A stretch of DNA of 63,282 bases, counting the filler, from Octopus bimaculoides (lineage: Eukaryota): assembly GCF_001194135.2 (NCBI RefSeq). It is 5 parts of 5 records of this genome, joined end to end, with 100 filler letters (N's around TTAATTAATTAA, not from the genome) between each part and the next. Parts side by side here need not be neighbours in the genome. Positions count along the whole stretch, not along the records: positions 38,195 to 51,178 come from NC_069000.1; 4 more parts are not named here. The stretch is one strand, 5' to 3'. This document shows, piece after piece, positions 38,430-51,178 of this stretch. A program made the position numbers and the translations under genes. A model generated the notes under the pieces. The model was not told where the DNA came from, did not search any database, and was given only the letters and a program-made list of their open reading frames with translations. The stretch's first letter is position 1. The number at the start of each line of letters is the position of its first letter.

Positions 38430-39480
38430 TTGATAAAATTTTCTGACAGAGTTTGTGACAAAGAAAAAGAAAAAAGAGATAAGGAAGAAGAAGGAGGAGG
38501 AGCCTTTCCTTTGTTTCGTTTTTACAAACATAGGGTTTGTCGCTTTAATTCAAATTCTGGGAAGGGCGAGGGTGAAAACAGCAGCAAAACAAACAGCGCC
38601 ACCATCGTCGCACTACGGCGGCGGCAGCAGCAACAGCAACAACAACAACAACAGCAGCAGCAGTAGCAACAATGCGTCCAGCTGCAATAGTAACATCTTC
38701 GCTACGCCGCAATCACCATTAGTAACTCTTAAGATGCATGCTAATGTAACGGTTTAAACGACTGCCAGACCCATCCCTTAACAGCAAAAGCAGCGCCCCC
38801 ATCATCACGTCCCACCCCCACCCTCCATCAAAAGCAGTTTTTTGCTACATCAGTGTGCACGACCGTGACCACCACCATCAACAAGGCAACGTCAGTCGCC
38901 AAACTCTCGCACAGGGGCGGGTGGGGCATTCGTTTTCAAATCATGAACCTCTCAGCTAAAAGCGCAACAGTTACATATTACGACCTGACTTGTTCGCTCT
39001 GTTAACGAGGGGAAAAAAGGGAATAAAGAATGAAGATTTATCATTGCCATGTGCATGAACAGAGAAAATAGAGGAGAAAAGTGGCGGGTTACCCTGGGCC
39101 CTCAACTCCTGGTGGCGTTGCAAAGAGCAATGTTATGACATATGGAGTGCCTCGGGCATTTATAAACTTGGCGGAGCCCGTTTCTTTCCAAATGCGACCA
39201 CAATTGACTTCTTCCAGAAACTTCTAGTTTGGGCCACGTCTTCCGGTAAAGACAGGCAGAAAAAATGAGAGAGAGAAAAAATCGACCACACCACAGGACT
39301 ACGCGAAGAACTCAGTATTCTGTGAATACCGATGCGCAGATATTGACAGAAGTTGCAAAATCTGCCGAGACAACTGGACATTGAGCAGGAGCTGCCGATG
39401 ATTGTCAATCACGTTTTCCTCACAACTCATTTCTTTGGCAGAGGCTTGTAATCCTGGCTAAAACAAAGACCAATATTGAG
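38430..39480. promoter_or_regulatory. Unique, relatively CpG-rich island, possible promoter or first/last exon region
   Basis: Higher GC/CpG than the flanks by eye, GC box GGGGCGG at 38914-38920, CTCF-like CTCCTGGTGGCG at about 39106-39117, (CAG/CAA)n tract. Confidence 0.3.
38534..38757 (+). CDS. Possible terminal exon, low-complexity G/S/N-rich peptide
   Basis: Pyrimidine tract tttcctttgtttcgtttttacaaacatag| then open phase-1 frame FVALIQILGRARVKTAAKQTAPPSSHYGGGSSNSNNN...HANVTV*; phase compatible with the 36124 microexon. No recognisable domain. Confidence 0.2.
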
Positions 39481-39679
39481 ACCTCGACATCGGAATACTG
39501 TTAGACCCTTCTCCAGGCTGATTTCAATCATCTTCCCTTGTCCCAACCACCAAATATGTATGGTATTCTATCAATGTTATACATCGTTGTCTCACTGTGA
39601 TATAGTAGACTGTAAGACAGAGGGAGGAGGGGTGGCATACATGTGTAAGTATATATATATATACACACACGTGTGTGGA

Positions 39680-39975
39680 GGCACATGACCTAGATGTTAG
39701 AGCAATAGACTCGCAGTCGAAGGATCGTGGGTTCGAATCTCAGACCGGGCGATGTGTGTGTTTATGAGCTAAACACCTACGCTCCACGAGGCTCCGACAG
39801 AAGTTAATGGCGAACTTCTGCTGACTCTTTCGCCACAACTTTCTCTCACAATTTCCTCCGGCATCTAGCAGCTCACCTGAGACGGACCGGCATCCCATCC
39901 AGGTGGGGAACCTATACGCCAATGAAACCGGGAAACTGGCCCTTATGAGCCAGACATGACTCGAGAAGGAACAAA
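39680..39975 (+). mobile_element. SINE family C
   Basis: Co-linear with 22340-22645. Confidence 0.8.
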
Positions 39976-40036
39976 CACACAACATATATATATATCTACA
40001 TATATGTGTGCGTCATATATATATATATATATATAT

Positions 40037-40420
40037 AATGGCTGTGTGGTAAGTAGCTTGCTTACCAACCACATGGTCCTGGGTTCAGTCCCGCTGCATG
40101 GCACCTTGGGCGAGTGTCTTCTACTATAGCCTTGGTAGACGGAAACTGGAAGAAGCCCGTCGTATATGTATATATATATATGTATGTGTGTGTATATGTT
40201 TGTGTGTCTGTGATTGTTCCCCCCCCCCCCCNNNNNNNNNNNNNNNNNNNNNNNNNNNNNNNNNNCCATCGCTTGACAACTGATGCTGGTGTGTTTTCGG
40301 CAAAAGAGACCGATAGAATAATAGGCTTACACAGAATAAGCTCTGGTGTCGATTTGCTCGACTAAAGGCGGTGCTCCAGCATGGCAGCAGTCAAATGACT
40401 GACACAAGTAAAAGAATAAG
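40037..40420 (+). mobile_element. SINE family B (gap inside)
   Basis: tggctgtgtggtaagtagcttgc...gggttcagtccc...ggtagacggaaactg...atgactgacacaagtaaaaga. Confidence 0.85.
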
Positions 40421-40612
40421 AGAACATAAAACACAGATACGTAAATACATATACCATCATCGCTGCTGCCACCTCCAGCTCTGATTACCTGCCATCACAG
40501 TTACTATCACCATCCCATCACTCTAACCACCACCACCACCACCACCACCACACCTCCCTATGTTCCTACCAGTTCTCAATTCTGAGACCAATTCTCCACT
40601 CTAAATAGCTTC

Positions 40613-40649
<37 letters not shown>

Positions 40650-41773
40650 GCAGAATTTATCAAAAGGGCGTGCATGATAGTTCCTACATGAGCATCTACC
40701 TTCAGTTTTGCTGGTGTATGTAATTTATACATACACATGTGTGTGCTTATTTACACATGTATGTAGACAAATAAACAGAAACACAGAAACAGACGCACAC
40801 ACACACAGAGACAGACAAACAGACAGATATACACCCATGTGATATTATGTTGCTCCTGTCTGAACATAAACCCGTTAAATCAATGTTTAAGGTTGTGTCT
40901 TTTTTTTAAAGTCACAACCTTAACATAAGGGTACACCTACCCGACCAACATGAAACAGTATAGCAGGGAACCCTAATACATAAACACAAAGGTATATGGT
41001 ACAAACATACTGACGATAATAGGAATAAATAGGGACTTTTAGGGGTCTTCAATAAATGTGAATATCTACATTTGCTAAAATAAGGGTTGTATTTTGTGAT
41101 TCAAGATGGTTCCATGTCTGTACAAGAGATTGGGAAAATGGTGGAGGAGAGAGAGAGGGAGAGAGAGAGATTCAACATCAACAATGAGCATGAGGTGTGA
41201 TTTTTATATTTTTTATTTATTAAATAAATGAAAGACAATAGTCGATAATAACGATCATGATGATGATGATATTGATATACGTTTTCCGAATGTAAAAAAA
41301 AAATAGTGAAAAGAAAGTGTATTTAATGTTTACAAAAGTGCATAGATAAAATGTGCATACGTGAGAGAGATAGTCCGGTTATATATATAGTTTACATGAA
41401 GCATTGTCTGATATATATATAAATGTTCTTAATTTTTTTTATAAAGCCAAAATAATACAAGTTACAAGAAATAATATCAGTCTTTTAAATGCACTTTTAT
41501 CTTGGATGTCAATATTCCAGAATTAGGACCCCCTCTTTGGAGAAGTCAGCTCCAACACCATTTCTCCAAAGATTTCTTGAAGAAGGGCTCTTAACCTCAA
41601 AATATTGAAATACAAAATAAAAGGACAAAACATCAAATTGTATTATTTCTTATAACTTATGTTGTTTTAGTTTTATGAAAAATGATTAAACACACACACA
41701 CACAAGTAAGCACATAAATGCAAAAGTAGGTGGGAAAAAAAGTACTTGAATACCAAAGGTAGAGTAATATCCT

Positions 41774-41779
41774 TTTATT
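41774..41779 (-). promoter_or_regulatory. Candidate poly(A) signal for MBD4
   Basis: AATAAA on the minus strand about 570 nt after the stop codon, inside a PLE-derived repeat. Position only. Confidence 0.25.
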
Positions 41780-41801
41780 AAAGCTGCAAAATTTTCACAA
41801 A

Positions 41802-41842
41802 ACTGTTACTCAGAGTTTCACGTTCCCATTTCATCAGAATAC
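41802..41842 (-). ncRNA. Hammerhead ribozyme motif, intact core, in the probable MBD4 3' UTR
   Basis: CUGAUGA (41837-41831), A-AUG-ggaa-CGU stem II, GAAA (41819-41816), near-palindromic ACUCUGAGU stem III, GUA, then acagt. Stem I 5' arm (agtatt) pairs poorly. Confidence 0.55.
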
Positions 41843-41880
41843 TAAATTACAAGCATGATTTTAATTGAGTATCCATCACA

Positions 41881-41920
41881 ACTGCCTGACAAATGGGAAC
41901 ACAAAACTCTGAGTAACAGT
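41881..41920 (+). ncRNA. Degenerate hammerhead motif, inverted partner of 41802-41842
   Basis: actgc-CUGACAA-atgggaacac-AAAA-ctctgag-UA-acagt; two core substitutions, stem I retained. Confidence 0.45.
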
Positions 41921-42088
41921 TGCATGAAAATTTTGCAGCTCTAATAAAAGTACACACACACACACACACTCACGCACATATACAAACACATCACACAACC
42001 AGTGCACAAGTCCCCACCATATTACACACTTCTGGTAGACACACCATGCCAACACCACTCCAAAACTTAAAACTCAACAGCCTTCCAG

Positions 42089-42171
42089 TTAGCTACACAT
42101 GACCTAACTTGTAGCATTAGCATGGAGGTTTTAGCTACACATGACCTAACATGTAGCATTAGCATGGAGGT
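42089..42171. repeat. 42-bp tandem duplication in the probable MBD4 3' UTR
   Basis: ttagctacacatgacctaac(t/a)tgtagcattagcatggaggt twice. Confidence 0.9.
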
Positions 42172-42343: not shown

Positions 42344-42418
42344 TTAGATTCCAAGTCGTTCATGATTGTCCCATAACCATTTATAGTAGTTGTTGAGTTT
42401 ATGGTCAGTAGGTATCAC
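42344..42418 (-). CDS. MBD4: MBD4 last coding exon with catalytic Asp and stop codon
   Basis: Acceptor ctctctccacag|; [24 protein letters not shown], matching the MBD4 C-terminus [22 protein letters not shown]. Too short to appear in the ORF track. Confidence 0.95.
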
Positions 42419-43032
42419 CTGTGGAGAGAGAGAGAGAGAAACAAAGTGGTTATTATATTTTTATATATATATATATGTCAATATCTATCTATTTATATAT
42501 GTTGTATGTATGTATATATATATATATATATATATATNNNNNNNNNNNNNNNNNNNNNNNNNNNNNNNNNNNNNNNNNNNNNNNNNNNNNNNNNNNNNNN
42601 NNNNNNNNNNNNNNNNNNNNNNNNNNNNNNNNNNNNNNNNNNNNNNNNNNNNNNNNNNNNNNNNNNNNNNNNNNNNNNNNNNNNNNNNNNNNNNNNNNNN
42701 NNNNNNNNNNNNNNNNNNNNNNNNNNNNNNNNNNNNNNNNNNNNNNNNNNNNNNNNNNNNNNNNNNNNNNNNNNNNNNNNNNNNNNNNNNNNNNNNNNNN
42801 NNNNNNNNNNNNNNNNNNNNNNNNNNNNNNNNNNNNNNNNNNNNNNNNNNNNNNNNNNNNNNNNNNNNNNNNNNNNNNNNNNNNNNNNNNNNNNNNNNNN
42901 NNNNNNNNNNNNNNNNNNNNNNNNNNNNNNNNNNNNNNNNNNNNNNNNNNNNNNNNNNNNNNNNNNNNNNNNNNNNNNNNNNNNNNNNNNNNNNNNNNNN
43001 NNNNNNNNNNNNNNNNNNNNNNNNNNNNNNNN

Positions 43033-47145: not shown

Positions 47146-48316
47146 ATAAAATATAGTACCAGTCATATACTAAGGTAGACGACATTCACTAATTCCCTTC
47201 CCCTCAAAACTGCTAGTTAACTAGGTACTTAACTAACCAGCTAACTAATTAATAGTACAATTAATTAGATCAATCCACACATATCAAGAAAATTACTTCT
47301 CTCATTCTATCTTCGTTTAATTATATTTAGTCGTAAATGATTTCTCTAATATGTGAATAACATAGCCACAGGTTGGCTACACCAAACAGGAGAAATAGAA
47401 CTAAATACATGAAAATCCTTATCTAACGTCTGTTTTCCATGCTGGCATGGGTTGGACAGCTTGACTAAAGCTGGCAAACCAGAGAACTGCCCCAAGCTTC
47501 AATTGCCCATTTTGGTGGGGTTACTATGGCAGGATGCCCTTCCTAACACCAGCCACTTTACAGAATGTACCGAGTGCTTTTTACATAAACTATCTGCGGA
47601 ACCAACAACTGATGAAGGATTGTTTTGTTTGTCTTGTTTTCCATTTGTGTCTTTCATTATTCGGAAAAATAATTCATATTCCATGTACTCGTACTTCATT
47701 GTTGTACACATTTCATGACGTCCTGTGCCCACATATGCATATATATATATATCATTTATATTATTATATATTTATACATACACACACACAAGTATATATG
47801 TGTGTGTGTGTGTGTGTGTCTGTNNNNNNNNNNNNNNNNNNNNNNNNNNNNNNNNNNNNNNNNNNNNNNNNNNNNNNNNNNNNNNNNNNNNNNNNNNNNN
47901 NNNNNNNNNNNNNNNNNNNNNNNNNNNNNNNNNNNNNNNNNNNNNNNNNNNNNNNNNNNNNNNNNNNNNNNNNNNNNNNNNNNNNNNNNNNNNNNNNNNN
48001 NNNNNNNNNNNNNNNNNNNNNNNNNNNNNNNNNNNNNNNNNNNNNNNNNNNNNNNNNNNNNNNNNNNNNNNNNNNNNNNNNNNNNNNNNNNNNNNNNNNN
48101 NNNNNNNNNNNNNNNNNNNNNNNNNNNNNNNNNNNNNNNNNNNNNNNNNNNNNNNNNNNNNNNNNNNNNNNNNNNNNNNNNNNNNNNNNNNNNNNNNNNN
48201 NNNNNNNNNNNNNNNNNNNNNNNNNNNNNNNNNNNNNNNNNNNNNNNNNNNNNNNNNNNNNNNNNNNNNNNNNNNNNNNNNNNNNNNNNNNNNNNNNNNN
48301 NNNNNNNNNNNNNNNN

Positions 48317-49175: not shown

Positions 49176-50760
49176 TGTGAATGGAATTATAAAAGACGGC
49201 CAAGACGACCTAGAGGCTCCCTCACCGGTTTGTATGAATAACAGTTAAGTATTGAGGTTGATTAAATATTCCAATCAATCGTTTTAAATTGAAAAGCAAT
49301 TATAAGAGAAATCTAAGACAATTCAGAGACTCCCTCACTGGGTCCAATAAATCACAGTTAAGTACCAAGGTAGATCCACACTACCTACAAATCATCCTGG
49401 ATTTGAATACAAAACACATTAGAATTATATCCAACACGGCCCACAACGCATATCAAAACACTACCACACCTCCACTAAACACGAGTGGCACTCAACTGGA
49501 GATCTCACAGTCACTCCAAATACGAGGCAACACTATAACCAAGGATCTCACCAGGCAAAAACTCAACCCCATCATAGCTAGAATCTCATCTCAAAGACTG
49601 GGTCCTTCTTTTTAGGGCCAGAAAATATATCAGCCCCACCCCACCCCACAATAGTTTCTACAGCTGCATGTTCTTCCTAATGCCAACTTTAATAGAAGTC
49701 TTCAGATCCATACAAGAATCTAAACTTGGAACATTAATATAAGAAAAAAATATATATAATAATTCTAGAGCCCCTTTTACATACAGCAGTGGACTCCACT
49801 TATTGACAGCCAGGTAGACCGGGCCATGGAGTGTCATGTTTCCTGCCAGGTGCATATTAACATAGGTAGATGGCTATAAGCTAAACACTCGGTAGTTCTA
49901 TCTCACAAAATACTCAGGCTTTTCTTCAGTATTGAGTCCTTCTTTGTTTTCATTGAAAGTTACCTGTCGTTTTTAATTTCATTTAAAAAAAAAAAAAATT
50001 TCAAATCGATATAAATAATATATACATATATTATATATATATAGATATTATATATATATATATATATATATATGTCATATATGTCCACTGGACAAAATTG
50101 AGCAATTGAGGTGAAAGGATAGTATAATCATTTGAATTTTTTTTTAGTTTTGTGTGTGTGTGTGTGTGTGCATGCGTGTGTGCATGTATCTATATATGCA
50201 TATGTTATTAGAGTTTGGCTCAGTTTCATGGGCATGAACAACACGTCCATCTCCTCAGATATTCAGAGACAAGAAACGTTATGTCATGCTGTCTCTGTTA
50301 ATGGAACTTTAAACAAAGCCAAACTTATTAAATACATATAACCCCAACTGAATGAGTTGAGTGTTACTTCCTTGCAACAGTCATACACATATATATATAT
50401 ATATATATATATATGTGTATATATATATAATTTATATTTTATACTGTGAAACTTAATTTAATTTTAATTTTTGATAAATTGATTTTAATTGAGTTTTTAC
50501 CTGTAATTTTGGATTTTTATCCCTAATATTATTAATATAATATACATATATGTATCAGGGGGAAGTGCTTCTATATACACACATTTAATCTATATCTGTG
50601 TGTGTGTGTATGTATATACAATGTGTACACATCTGAATAGTCTGTATATAAATGTGTGTGTGTGTGTAAAATGCAATTGCTTGTCTCTAAACACATCCTG
50701 AAAATCTGAAGTAGAGACATGAAATTGTGTAGAGAATGCAACAATGCTACCAAATCTCAC

Positions 50761-51178
50761 CTTTAATGGAAGAATTTTGACAACTTTTGGCATCGGCCAC
50801 TTTGAAATTATCAGCGTCACCATTATCTTCATCACTGCCAGCAGCAACTTTAGCCATTTTATTGGGATGCAAGTCTTTTAACAATTCAGGGCCGCACTCC
50901 TTTTCCAACTTCCTTTTTTTGGAAAGGAAGCTGGCCAAAGATGGTGAACCATTCTCTTTGAGATGAGATTGTGATGCCAATGTTTTGGAACCTGAACACA
51001 GAGGCATGATTTTCTTATCAGAACTAACAGAGTTTGTTACTTTTGAAGAATTGGTGATAAGTTTCTTATTGGAACTATTACTAACAGAGTTAGTGTCTTT
51101 TGAAGAATTGGTGGCATTTTTCTCTTTTAATTTTGGGGAACCATTCTCTTTCAGGTGAGATTGTGATGCCAATGTTTT
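50761..51178 (-). CDS. MBD4: MBD4 coding exon, low-complexity Ser/Lys/Asn-rich linker; 5' end runs into the gap at 51179
   Basis: Open frame KTLASQSHLKENGSP...KSCQNSSIK ending at G|GTGAGA donor (phase 1), which joins in frame to the next exon (G+AA = Glu). Link to MBD4 rests on position, strand and phase. Confidence 0.7.

What the first reader, a model, noticed from the sequence alone, without database searches (positions are those of the whole stretch)
41772..41950. Hammerhead fold-back in the probable MBD4 3' UTR, with the intact core on the sense strand just before an AATAAA
On the MBD4 (minus) transcript the order is stop codon (42344), antisense arm, 40-nt spacer, a hammerhead with all core nucleotides intact (CUGAUGA, GAAA, GUA; cut after 41807), then AATAAA (41774-41779). 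The two 70-bp arms would pair and mask the ribozyme, and offer a dsRNA editing substrate. If the UTR reaches here, a TE-derived switch (fold-back versus ribozyme fold, editing, polyadenylation) could affect a DNA-repair mRNA. The weak stem I argues that it may be inactive.
Basis: partly seen in the sequence, partly recalled or inferred. Interest (0 to 1): 0.7.

Follow-up and report, generated by a model that had tools for sequence, protein, structure and literature searches.

The report
Dead hammerhead relic in fold-back repeat
About 400-570 bases past the stop codon of an MBD4-like DNA-repair gene lies a 179-base inverted repeat made of two decayed, mirror-image copies of a transposon end that once carried a hammerhead ribozyme; neither copy can now form the ribozyme, so it is an ordinary repeat relic that at most gives the transcript a long hairpin and a poly(A) signal.

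Summary
These are the MBD4 stop codon (42346-42344, minus strand), a 179-nt near-palindrome (41772-41950), CUGAUGA/GAAA/GUA on the MBD4 strand, and AATAAA at 41779-41774.

It is not a working hammerhead.
- **Minus-strand copy:** the core is intact, but a 12-nt gap relative to its sister arm removes the 5' strand of helix I. Helices II and III together score +0.8 kcal/mol, against about -90 kcal/mol for the fold-back.
- **Plus-strand copy:** it keeps a perfect 6-bp helix I in the correct register (chance about 9e-4), but G8 and G12 are lost.
- **Rfam:** no hammerhead model matches, even at E<=10.

Read together, the two arms reconstruct one complete type-I hammerhead with a palindromic helix III and an extra base after A9. 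This layout resembles the ribozymes of Penelope-like elements and animal retrozymes.

Best reading: two 5'-truncated, head-to-head copies of a ribozyme-bearing retroelement end, both now inactive.

Two minor points remain open. The first canonical poly(A) hexamers downstream of the MBD4 stop both lie inside the element. All seven transition differences between the arms give G·U pairs on the MBD4 strand. No other family copy, orthologous locus or transcript could be retrieved.

The parts
41772..41950 (.). Whole 179-nt near-palindromic element: two head-to-head half-copies with their 3' ends (…TAATAAAAG) facing outward.
   Evidence: Inverted repeat found. RNA folds at -92.9 kcal/mol (minus) and -77.9 kcal/mol (plus), z about -14.5 to -14.8. 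Self-alignment.
41800..41838 (-). Minus-strand ('M') hammerhead-like copy, on the MBD4 sense strand. Layout: U2.1 at 41838; CUGAUGA 41837-41831; extra A 41830; helix II AUG/CGU 41829-41827 and 41822-41820 with a GGAA loop; GAAA 41819-41816; palindromic ACUCUGAGU 41816-41808; A17 at 41807; A1.1 at 41806; CAGUUU 41805-41800. The core is intact but helix I has no 5' strand.
   Evidence: Sequence. It is the only descriptor hit in the piece, with helix I = 1 bp. Helices II+III score +0.8 kcal/mol. No Rfam hammerhead hit.
41879..41922 (+). Plus-strand ('P') copy, antisense to MBD4. Helix I CAACUG 41879-41884 pairs with CAGUUG 41917-41922 (6 Watson-Crick bp). The core is mutated: CUGAC-A at 41886-41891 (U7 changed to C, G8 lost) and AAAA at 41903-41906 (G12 changed to A). 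The palindromic helix III and GUA (41913-41915) are kept.
   Evidence: Sequence, alignment, fold. Chance of a 6-bp Watson-Crick helix I in register is 9e-4.
41873..41884 (+). 12-nt segment CCATCACAACTG, present only in the P copy and missing from the M copy between 41839 and 41838. It contains the entire 5' strand of helix I.
   Evidence: Self-alignment of the element against its reverse complement.
41774..41779 (-). AATAAA at the 3' end of the M copy. It is the first AATAAA downstream of the MBD4 stop codon, and it is fully base-paired with 41943-41948 in the fold-back.
   Evidence: Hexamer scan; minimum-free-energy structure.
41943..41948 (+). Mirror-image AATAAA at the 3' end of the P copy. 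It shows that the hexamer belongs to the repeat unit and not to the gene.
   Evidence: Sequence.
41860..41865 (-). ATTAAA at the centre of the palindrome. It is the first canonical poly(A) hexamer after the MBD4 stop codon, 481 nt downstream.
42344..42418 (-). Last coding exon of the MBD4-like gene ([24 protein letters not shown], then TAA at 42346-42344), preceded by an AG acceptor at 42420-42419.
   Evidence: Homology to MBD4 proteins.
41687..41716 (+). (CA)n-containing 30-mer, 83% identical to 41951-41980. Possibly a split microsatellite target or a long target-site duplication. Weak evidence, because (CA)n is common in this piece.
   Evidence: Direct repeat D1; tandem repeat finder.
41951..41980 (+). 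Second copy of the (CA)n-containing 30-mer, directly abutting the 3' end of the P copy.
41717..41771 (+). 55-nt unique segment between the left (CA)n block and the palindrome. It could be a retroelement 'tail', filler DNA or plain flank; undetermined.
   Evidence: Sequence. No other copy in the piece.

Best explanation
The 179-nt element is a decayed, head-to-head pair of 5'-truncated copies of the last ~90 nt of a retroelement that carried a type-I hammerhead about 35 nt before its AATAAA-bearing 3' end. That element was probably of the Penelope-like or animal-retrozyme kind.

**Origin (inferred).** Both strands of the target, possibly a (CA)n microsatellite, primed reverse transcription from the element's 3' end. 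This left two outward-facing 3' ends and an inner junction at about 41851-41862.

**Decay (shown).** Since insertion the two copies have diverged by about 12%. The copy on the MBD4 sense strand keeps every core nucleotide but lacks the 12 nt that hold the 5' strand of helix I. The antisense copy keeps a 6-bp helix I but has lost G8 and G12.

**Consequence (inferred).** Neither copy can fold into or act as a hammerhead. If MBD4 transcripts reach it, the element behaves as a roughly -90 kcal/mol hairpin. Its distal arm carries the first AAUAAA after the stop codon, buried in the stem.

**Strand asymmetry.** All seven transition differences give G·U pairs on the MBD4 strand. I read this as the signature of transcription-associated A>G and C>T mutation bias on the non-template strand (inferred). 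That would itself suggest the region is transcribed in the MBD4 direction.
For: - **One complete hammerhead from two arms.** M supplies CUGAUGA, GAAA and U2.1. P supplies CAACUG/CAGUUG. Both share the helix II hairpin AUG-GGAA-C.., the palindromic ACUCUGAGU, and GUA.
- **Chance is low.** The relaxed descriptor is expected 0.036 times per 12 kb, which is about 5e-4 for a 179-nt element. A 6-bp Watson-Crick helix I in register has probability 9e-4, and the two further palindromic helix III pairs 0.067.
- **The reconstructed ancestor folds correctly.** It adopts the hammerhead topology at -5.5 kcal/mol, and its minimum-free-energy fold keeps helices I and II.
- **Features match the literature on Penelope-like elements.** These include an unpaired base between positions 9 and 10.1, a palindromic 15.2-16.2/loop 3, and paired motifs on opposite strands 100-700 bp apart from truncated copies (PMC4209133). 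Also reported are inverted 5'-truncated copies, optional tails and microsatellite targets (PMC8557442), and a PLE protein that cleaves and extends both target strands in vitro (PMC11167929).
- **The hexamer belongs to the repeat.** Each arm ends in AATAAAAG.
- **Inactivity.** Helix I is 1 bp in M. Helices II+III score +0.8 kcal/mol against -90.3 kcal/mol for the fold-back. No Rfam hammerhead hit appears even at E<=10.
- **Strand asymmetry.** The arms hold 7 G·U pairs on the minus strand and none on the plus strand, two-sided p = 0.016.
Against: - **No second family member was found.** Searches of the 13-kb piece, JGI metagenomes, IMG/VR, the paper library and the protein library all came up empty. 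The ancestral state is therefore inferred from two arms only, and the direction of each change is unknown.
- **The intact GAAA could have arisen by mutation.** The differences GUG versus ACA are all transitions, so GAAA in M could derive from AAAA rather than the reverse.
- **Two PLE hallmarks are missing.** There is no G10.1-C11.1 pair and no long (6-8 bp) helix II. Here helix II is 3 bp: A-U, U·G, G-C.
- **No reverse transcriptase or GIY-YIG reading frame nearby**.
- **Weak target-site duplication.** The only candidate is a microsatellite-rich 30-mer.
- **The seven G·U differences sit in four clusters,** so they are not independent events.
Confidence: 0.6

Rival explanations
1. The element is a fold-back or MITE-type DNA transposon, or a local inverted duplication, with no ribozyme ancestry. 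The hammerhead-like letters are coincidence.
For: - It has a compact, MITE-like architecture: roughly 85-nt arms, a short loop and 179 bp overall.
- No Rfam hammerhead hit.
- The core-only motif is not rare genome-wide, at about 3 per Mb by my descriptor.
- Helix II is poor and the usual G10.1-C11.1 pair is absent.
- The intact core could have been created by the same transitions that separate the arms.
Against: - The sister arm carries a perfect 6-bp helix I exactly flanking the core and the cleavage triplet (p about 9e-4).
- Helix III is palindromic (p about 0.07), and the extra base after A9 matches the published motif (PMC4209133).
- No target-site duplication of TA, TWA or 8 bp abuts the inverted-repeat ends.
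- The outer ends carry AATAAA, which is typical of a retroelement 3' end rather than of terminal inverted repeats.
Confidence: 0.15
2. One reading: a live hammerhead in the MBD4 3' UTR is masked by the upstream antisense arm. The balance between hairpin and ribozyme folds (modulated by editing or helicases) controls cleavage, polyadenylation and MBD4 mRNA level.
For: - The core nucleotides are intact on the sense strand.
- The element is probably inside the transcript, because no canonical poly(A) hexamer precedes it.
- From my own knowledge, a hammerhead embedded in rodent CLEC2 3' UTRs is a precedent (Martick et al. 2008).
Against: - Helix I is missing because of the 12-nt gap relative to the sister arm.
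- Helices II+III score +0.8 kcal/mol against about -90 kcal/mol for the hairpin.
- The competing arm is transcribed first, so kinetics also favour the hairpin.
- Hammerheads with short palindromic helix III are described as needing a same-orientation dimer and as cleaving poorly even then (PMC4209133). The only partner here is inverted and catalytically dead.
- No Rfam hit.
Confidence: 0.03
3. The ribozyme relic has been co-opted as a structured double-stranded RNA element of the MBD4 3' UTR. It could act as an ADAR editing, Staufen or Dicer substrate, or as a hairpin that hides the AAUAAA and so tunes alternative polyadenylation. Selection would then have kept the sense-strand hairpin intact.
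For: - All seven transition differences between the arms are G·U on the sense strand and A·C on the antisense strand.
- This makes the sense hairpin about 13-15 kcal/mol more stable; p = 0.016.
- AAUAAA is fully paired in the stem.
- It is the first AAUAAA after the stop codon.
Against: - Transcription-coupled mutation bias (A>G and C>T on the non-template strand) gives the same asymmetry without any selection.
- The differences fall in four clusters, so the effective sample is small.
- No orthologous locus, transcript or editing data could be obtained.
- The 3' UTR of the one related transcript found shows no similarity.
Confidence: 0.12

Closest known systems
Minimal hammerheads of Penelope-like elements (Cervera & De la Peña 2014, PMC4209133; Craig et al. 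2021, PMC8557442)
   Same: - Type-I topology.
- An unpaired base between A9 and helix II.
- A short helix III with a palindromic 15.2-16.2/loop 3, implying dimer-type activity.
- Frequent occurrence as isolated or paired motifs on opposite strands from truncated copies.
- Inverted 5'-truncated insertions and microsatellite targets.
   Different: - Helix II here is 3 bp closed by A-U, not 6-8 bp closed by G10.1-C11.1.
- Helix III is longer than in the 'minimal' motif.
- No pLTR or reverse transcriptase/GIY-YIG reading frame is in reach.
- Both copies are mutationally dead.
Animal non-LTR retrozymes with canonical type-I hammerheads (Cervera & De la Peña 2020, PMC7229834; bioRxiv 10.64898/2026.07.22.740005)
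   Same: - A 6-7-bp helix I, a short helix II and a 2-3-bp helix III with a palindromic loop.
- AT-rich non-coding repeat.
- Known in molluscs (about 5000 copies in the mussel).
   Different: - Retrozymes are direct tandem arrays of 150-450-bp monomers. This is a single inverted pair of about 90-nt fragments.
- No evidence of circular RNA.
- The bioRxiv preprint reports that vertebrate retrozymes are excluded from exons and introns, whereas this element lies next to or inside a UTR.
Discontinuous hammerhead in rodent CLEC2 3' UTRs (Martick et al. 2008; cited from my own knowledge)
   Same: A hammerhead-derived sequence lies between a stop codon and a poly(A) signal, where cleavage would lower mRNA levels.
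   Different: The CLEC2 ribozyme has all three helices and cleaves efficiently. Here helix I cannot form, and no long-range partner is topologically possible because position 2.1 must be contiguous with C3.
Inverted repeat pairs of retroelements in 3' UTRs (for example inverted Alu pairs) acting as double-stranded RNA and ADAR substrates (cited from my own knowledge)
   Same: Two inverted copies of a retroelement fragment form a long intramolecular duplex in a probable 3' UTR.
   Different: - The arms are much shorter (about 85 nt) and directly adjacent.
- The likely origin is a single insertion event rather than two independent insertions.
- No editing data are available.

Membership tests
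Hammerhead ribozyme (catalytically competent, type I) | Conserved core: C3 U4 G5 A6 N7 G8 A9, G12 A13 A14, the A15.1-U16.1 pair, and H17 | tested here: met
   The minus-strand copy has CUGAUGA 41837-41831, GAAA 41819-41816, U16.1 at 41808 and A17 at 41807. The plus-strand copy fails this test: G8 is lost and G12 is changed to A.
Hammerhead ribozyme (catalytically competent, type I) | Helix I formed by the bases directly 5' of C3 and directly 3' of the cleavage site | tested here: not met
   The minus-strand copy has 1 bp only, because it lacks the 12 nt holding the 5' strand. The plus-strand copy has 6 Watson-Crick bp but a dead core.
Hammerhead ribozyme (catalytically competent, type I) | Stable helices II and III around the core | tested here: inconclusive
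   Helix II is 3 bp (A-U, U·G, G-C) with a GGAA loop and a bulged A. Helix III is 2-3 bp. Together they score +0.8 kcal/mol. This weakness is tolerable only in dimer-type hammerheads.
Hammerhead ribozyme (catalytically competent, type I) | Match to a curated covariance model (the Rfam hammerhead families) | tested here: not met
   No hammerhead family is listed at E<=1 over 13 kb or at E<=10 over 241 nt.
Hammerhead ribozyme (catalytically competent, type I) | Self-cleavage at the predicted site | not testable with these tools
   Needs in vitro transcription assays or mapping of RNA ends.
Penelope-like element hammerhead (min-HHR) | [quoted passage not shown] | tested here: met
   An extra A at 41830 precedes the AUG/CGU stem. 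The feature is defined in PMC4209133.
Penelope-like element hammerhead (min-HHR) | Conserved G10.1-C11.1 pair and a long (6-8 bp) helix II | tested here: not met
   The closing pair is A-U and the stem is 3 bp.
Penelope-like element hammerhead (min-HHR) | Palindromic 15.2-16.2 / loop 3, allowing a dimeric helix III | tested here: met
   ACUCUGAGU (41816-41808) reads as a 4+1+4 palindrome and is identical in both arms.
Penelope-like element hammerhead (min-HHR) | Location in the pLTR of an element encoding a reverse transcriptase and a GIY-YIG endonuclease | tested here: inconclusive
   The ten longest reading frames of the piece gave no credible Pfam match and no reverse transcriptase or GIY-YIG hit; the only match listed was a sub-threshold one to an unrelated family. 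Most genomic motifs are reported as isolated truncated copies (PMC4209133), so absence nearby does not exclude membership.
Animal non-LTR retrozyme | Direct tandem repeats of 150-450 bp, each with a type-I hammerhead | tested here: not met
   The two copies are inverted, not tandem, and there are no further copies in the piece.
MITE / fold-back DNA transposon | Terminal inverted repeats flanked by a short target-site duplication | tested here: not met
   Inverted repeats are present. The flanks are …GTAATATC on one side and TACACACA… on the other, and they share no duplication.
MITE / fold-back DNA transposon | Many dispersed copies in the genome | not testable with these tools
   No eukaryotic genome collection is available. 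Metagenome and IMG/VR scans gave only chance matches or nothing.
microRNA precursor | Match to a curated family at its gathering score | tested here: not met
   The best match is the plant family MIR6140 at 65.6 bits against a gathering score of 140. This is a generic long-hairpin match.

The most novel reading that the evidence does not exclude
The hammerhead relic has been kept in the MBD4 3' UTR as a functional sense-strand hairpin. The exclusively G·U-preserving divergence of its arms would then reflect either selection for the RNA duplex or fixation in the genome of A-to-I edited positions. By burying the first AAUAAA after the stop codon, the hairpin would set the length or abundance of the mRNA of a DNA-repair glycosylase.
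Probability: 0.07. Interest if true: 0.55.

Novelty: new member of a known kind. Interest (0 to 1): 0.22.

Why it matters
The result is mainly a caution. An intact CUGAUGA…GAAA…GUH core is not a hammerhead. Here the sister arm shows precisely which part has been lost.

It also illustrates a head-to-head product of the kind expected if both target strands prime reverse transcription.

Two modest points could matter if followed up. First, the element supplies the first canonical poly(A) hexamers downstream of MBD4, which may be a case of a transposon-donated 3' end. Second, the strand-asymmetric G·U pattern is a cheap sequence-only indicator that the region is transcribed in the MBD4 direction, or that the hairpin is under selection.

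Tried and rejected
- **Rfam scans.** I scanned the whole piece and then a 241-nt sub-window at E<=10. No hammerhead appeared, only sub-threshold plant-miRNA hairpin models and microsatellite artefacts.
- **Other copies of the repeat.**
  - An 18-mer with 3 mismatches in the window found only the two arms.
  - blastn-short within the piece found nothing else.
  - An exact 18-mer scan of JGI metagenomes gave 8 hits with unrelated flanks, so all are chance matches.
  - A 21-base pattern in IMG/VR gave 0 hits.
  - Sequence strings searched in the paper library gave 0 hits.
- **Orthologues and transcripts.**
  - Two window reading frames were not on record.
  - Two protein searches found no near-identical MBD4.
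  - The best relative is an unnamed Logan transcript at 51% identity. It has at least 394 nt of 3' UTR, no similarity to this UTR and no visible poly(A) tail.
- **Protein-library search for family copies.** I searched the 1.84-billion-protein library with the 34-aa antisense reading frame of the arm. The single hit, P0230, looked promising because its VPISS would back-translate to TGATGAAATGGGAAC. It turned out to be a 174-bp satellite in an ENA metagenome contig. It shares only a 15-nt, 93% match per unit, has no CUGAUGA/GAAAC arrangement and gives no Rfam hit, so I rejected it as chance.
- **Alternative cleavage register.** A register of GUU with a 3-bp helix III and a 9-nt loop has no helix I at all.
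- **Bacterial promoter/terminator scan.** Irrelevant for this eukaryotic locus.
Full report
**What is in the sequence.**
The piece carries the 3' part of an MBD4-like gene on the minus strand. Its glycosylase-domain exons translate to a protein about 70% identical to annotated MBD4 proteins. The last coding exon is 42418-42344, encodes [24 protein letters not shown] and ends in TAA at 42346-42344.

The repeat finder gives inverted arms at 41772-41831 and 41891-41950, 60 nt and 88% complementary. This puts the element 394-572 nt downstream of the stop codon. Pairing continues into the 'spacer', so 41772-41950 is one near-palindrome with a loop of about 12 nt.

As RNA, the minus strand folds at -92.9 kcal/mol (z = -14.8) and the plus strand at -77.9 kcal/mol. 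On the MBD4 strand I confirm CUGAUGA at 41837-41831, GAAA at 41819-41816, GUA at 41809-41807 and AATAAA at 41779-41774.

**Is the sense-strand motif a hammerhead?**
It is not a complete one.
- Rfam lists no hammerhead family at E<=1 over the 13-kb piece. It also lists none at E<=10 over a 241-nt sub-window, where the filters are most permissive. The hits there are plant-miRNA hairpin models far below their gathering scores, which are generic matches to any long hairpin.
- I wrote a relaxed descriptor: CUGANGA, an optional unpaired base, helix II of at least 3 bp, GAAA, helix III of at least 2 bp, and H17. It finds only this site in the piece, and helix I there is 1 bp.
- Without a helix I requirement, such a motif is expected 0.036 times per 12 kb, or about 3 per Mb. 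The core by itself is therefore weak evidence.
- Helices II (A-U, U·G, G-C with a GGAA loop, after a bulged A) and III (2-3 bp) together score +0.8 kcal/mol. The fold-back scores -90.3 kcal/mol.
- The competing arm is transcribed first, which also favours the hairpin kinetically.

**What the sister arm shows.**
I aligned the element with its own reverse complement. The plus-strand half-copy (P) carries 12 extra nucleotides, CCATCACAACTG (41873-41884), just before its CUGA. The minus-strand half-copy (M) has nothing there.

These nucleotides contain CAACUG (41879-41884). It pairs perfectly with CAGUUG (41917-41922), which lies one base after the GUA triplet. That is a 6-bp helix I in exactly the hammerhead register, or 7 bp if position 2.1 was the U still present in M. 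The chance of such a helix in register is 9e-4.

P has lost the catalytic bases. It reads CUGAC-A instead of CUGAUGA, so G8 is gone, and AAAA instead of GAAA, so G12 is changed to A.

Both arms share ACUCUGAGU, a 4+1+4 palindrome spanning positions 15.1 to 16.1. The chance of the two extra palindromic pairs is 0.067.

Combining the arms gives a complete type-I hammerhead: CAACUGU-CUGAUGA-A-AUG GGAA CGU-GAAA-CUCUGAG-UA-ACAGUUG. It folds in the hammerhead topology at -5.5 kcal/mol, and its minimum-free-energy structure keeps helices I and II.

The joint chance probability for one 179-nt element is of order 1e-8 to 1e-7. I therefore regard hammerhead ancestry as well supported, even though each present-day copy is defective.

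**Comparison with known families.**
Cervera & De la Peña (PMC4209133) describe metazoan type-I hammerheads as having a 6-bp helix I, a 4-bp helix II and a 1-2-bp helix III capped by a small palindromic loop. These act as dimers.
- They occur mostly as isolated motifs from truncated elements, sometimes as two motifs 100-700 bp apart on opposite strands.
- They show little or no activity as monomers.

Craig et al. (PMC8557442) describe inverted 5'-truncated copies, 30-40-bp 'tails' and insertion into microsatellites, including (CA)n. A 2024 study found that a purified PLE protein cleaves and extends both target strands (PMC11167929).

The present element matches on several points:
- the extra base after A9;
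- the palindromic helix III;
- the opposite-strand pairing of the two copies;
- outward-facing 3' ends, each ending in AATAAAAG (41779-41772 on the minus strand, 41943-41950 on the plus strand);
- (CA)n-rich flanks, with 41687-41716 and 41951-41980 being 83% identical.

It fails on three points:
- there is no G10.1-C11.1 pair;
- helix II is short;
- no reverse transcriptase or endonuclease reading frame is nearby.

It is also not a retrozyme array, because there are no direct tandem copies. I therefore file it as 'works like, and probably derives from' this group, without claiming strict membership.

**Relation to MBD4.**
On the minus strand there is no AATAAA or ATTAAA in the 480 nt between the stop codon and the element. 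The first two canonical hexamers are ATTAAA at 41865-41860, at the palindrome centre, and AATAAA at 41779-41774, at the end of the element. The next ones are at 41327 and 41221.

By inference the transcript probably runs into the element, which may donate the poly(A) signal. However, that AAUAAA is fully paired in the terminal stem. From general knowledge, such pairing tends to impair recognition of the signal.

I could not obtain any transcript or orthologous locus to test this. The closest protein in the collection is an unnamed Logan transcript at 51% identity. Its 3' UTR is at least 394 nt and is unrelated in sequence.

**Strand asymmetry.**
Within the arms there are seven G·U pairs and one C·U mismatch in the minus-strand RNA. 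In the plus-strand RNA the same seven positions are A·C mismatches and there are no G·U pairs. Two-sided p = 0.016.

Whichever arm changed, every change was A>G or C>U on the MBD4 sense strand. This fits the known excess of those changes on the non-template strand of transcribed DNA. It also fits selection for the sense hairpin, or fixation of edited sites. The changes fall in four clusters and cannot be given a direction without an outgroup, so I treat this as a lead only.

**Verdict.**
The fold-back and the core letters are real, and the transposon origin and hammerhead ancestry are supported. A ribozyme/fold-back switch acting on MBD4 is not supported.

The element is best explained as a dead, head-to-head relic of a ribozyme-bearing retroelement end in or just beyond the MBD4 3' UTR. 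Interest is low to moderate. The testable residue is whether the element provides the MBD4 poly(A) site and whether the sense-strand hairpin is maintained.

**Limits.**
- No eukaryotic genome resource was available.
- All attempts to find further copies failed.
- The organism could not be named. The best named invertebrate match to the glycosylase domain is the mollusc Lottia gigantea at 72%.

Noticed in passing
window 42089-42171: A 42-bp unit (TTAGCTACACATGACCTAACWTGTAGCATTAGCATGGAGGT) is present as two tandem copies, 97-98% identical. It lies between the MBD4 stop codon and the palindrome, so probably also in the 3' UTR.
   Followed up: no
window 40232-40265, 42538-43032, 47824-48316: Three runs of N, which are assembly gaps. 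The second lies about 120 bp into the intron just upstream of the last MBD4 coding exon, next to a long (TA)n tract, so that intron's sequence is incomplete.
   Followed up: no
window 38430-38757 (+) and 38595-40600: A GC-richer block (43-51% GC against about 30-39% around the element). It contains a reading frame ending in a poly-glutamine/CAG-CAA repeat and a Ser/Asn-rich frame. It could be an exon or a CpG-island-like region of a neighbouring gene downstream of MBD4. The 100-aa frame at 38455-38754 gave no Pfam match.
   Followed up: partly
window 39973-40047 and 47770-47819: Sub-threshold Rfam 'miRNA' hits (mir-1277 at 44 bits against a gathering score of 81; mir-3149 at 37.5 against 100). 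They fall on (TA)n/(CA)n microsatellite hairpins and are composition artefacts, not miRNA genes.
   Followed up: partly
L011 9678-11244 (ENA metagenome contig ERZ25084454 ctg5195): A 174-bp satellite in 9 tandem copies at 98% identity, read by a gene caller as a 421-aa repeat protein (P0230). It shares only a 15-nt chance match (TGATGAAATAGGAAC) with the element and gives no Rfam hit.
   Followed up: yes
window 50750-51178 (-): A large, low-complexity Ser/Asn/Lys-rich MBD4 exon with an internal duplication (KTLASQSHLKENGSP occurs twice). The exon is cut by the edge of the piece. This middle region is alignable with an unnamed Logan transcript (P0107), which suggests a related taxon is present in public RNA-seq data.
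   Followed up: partly
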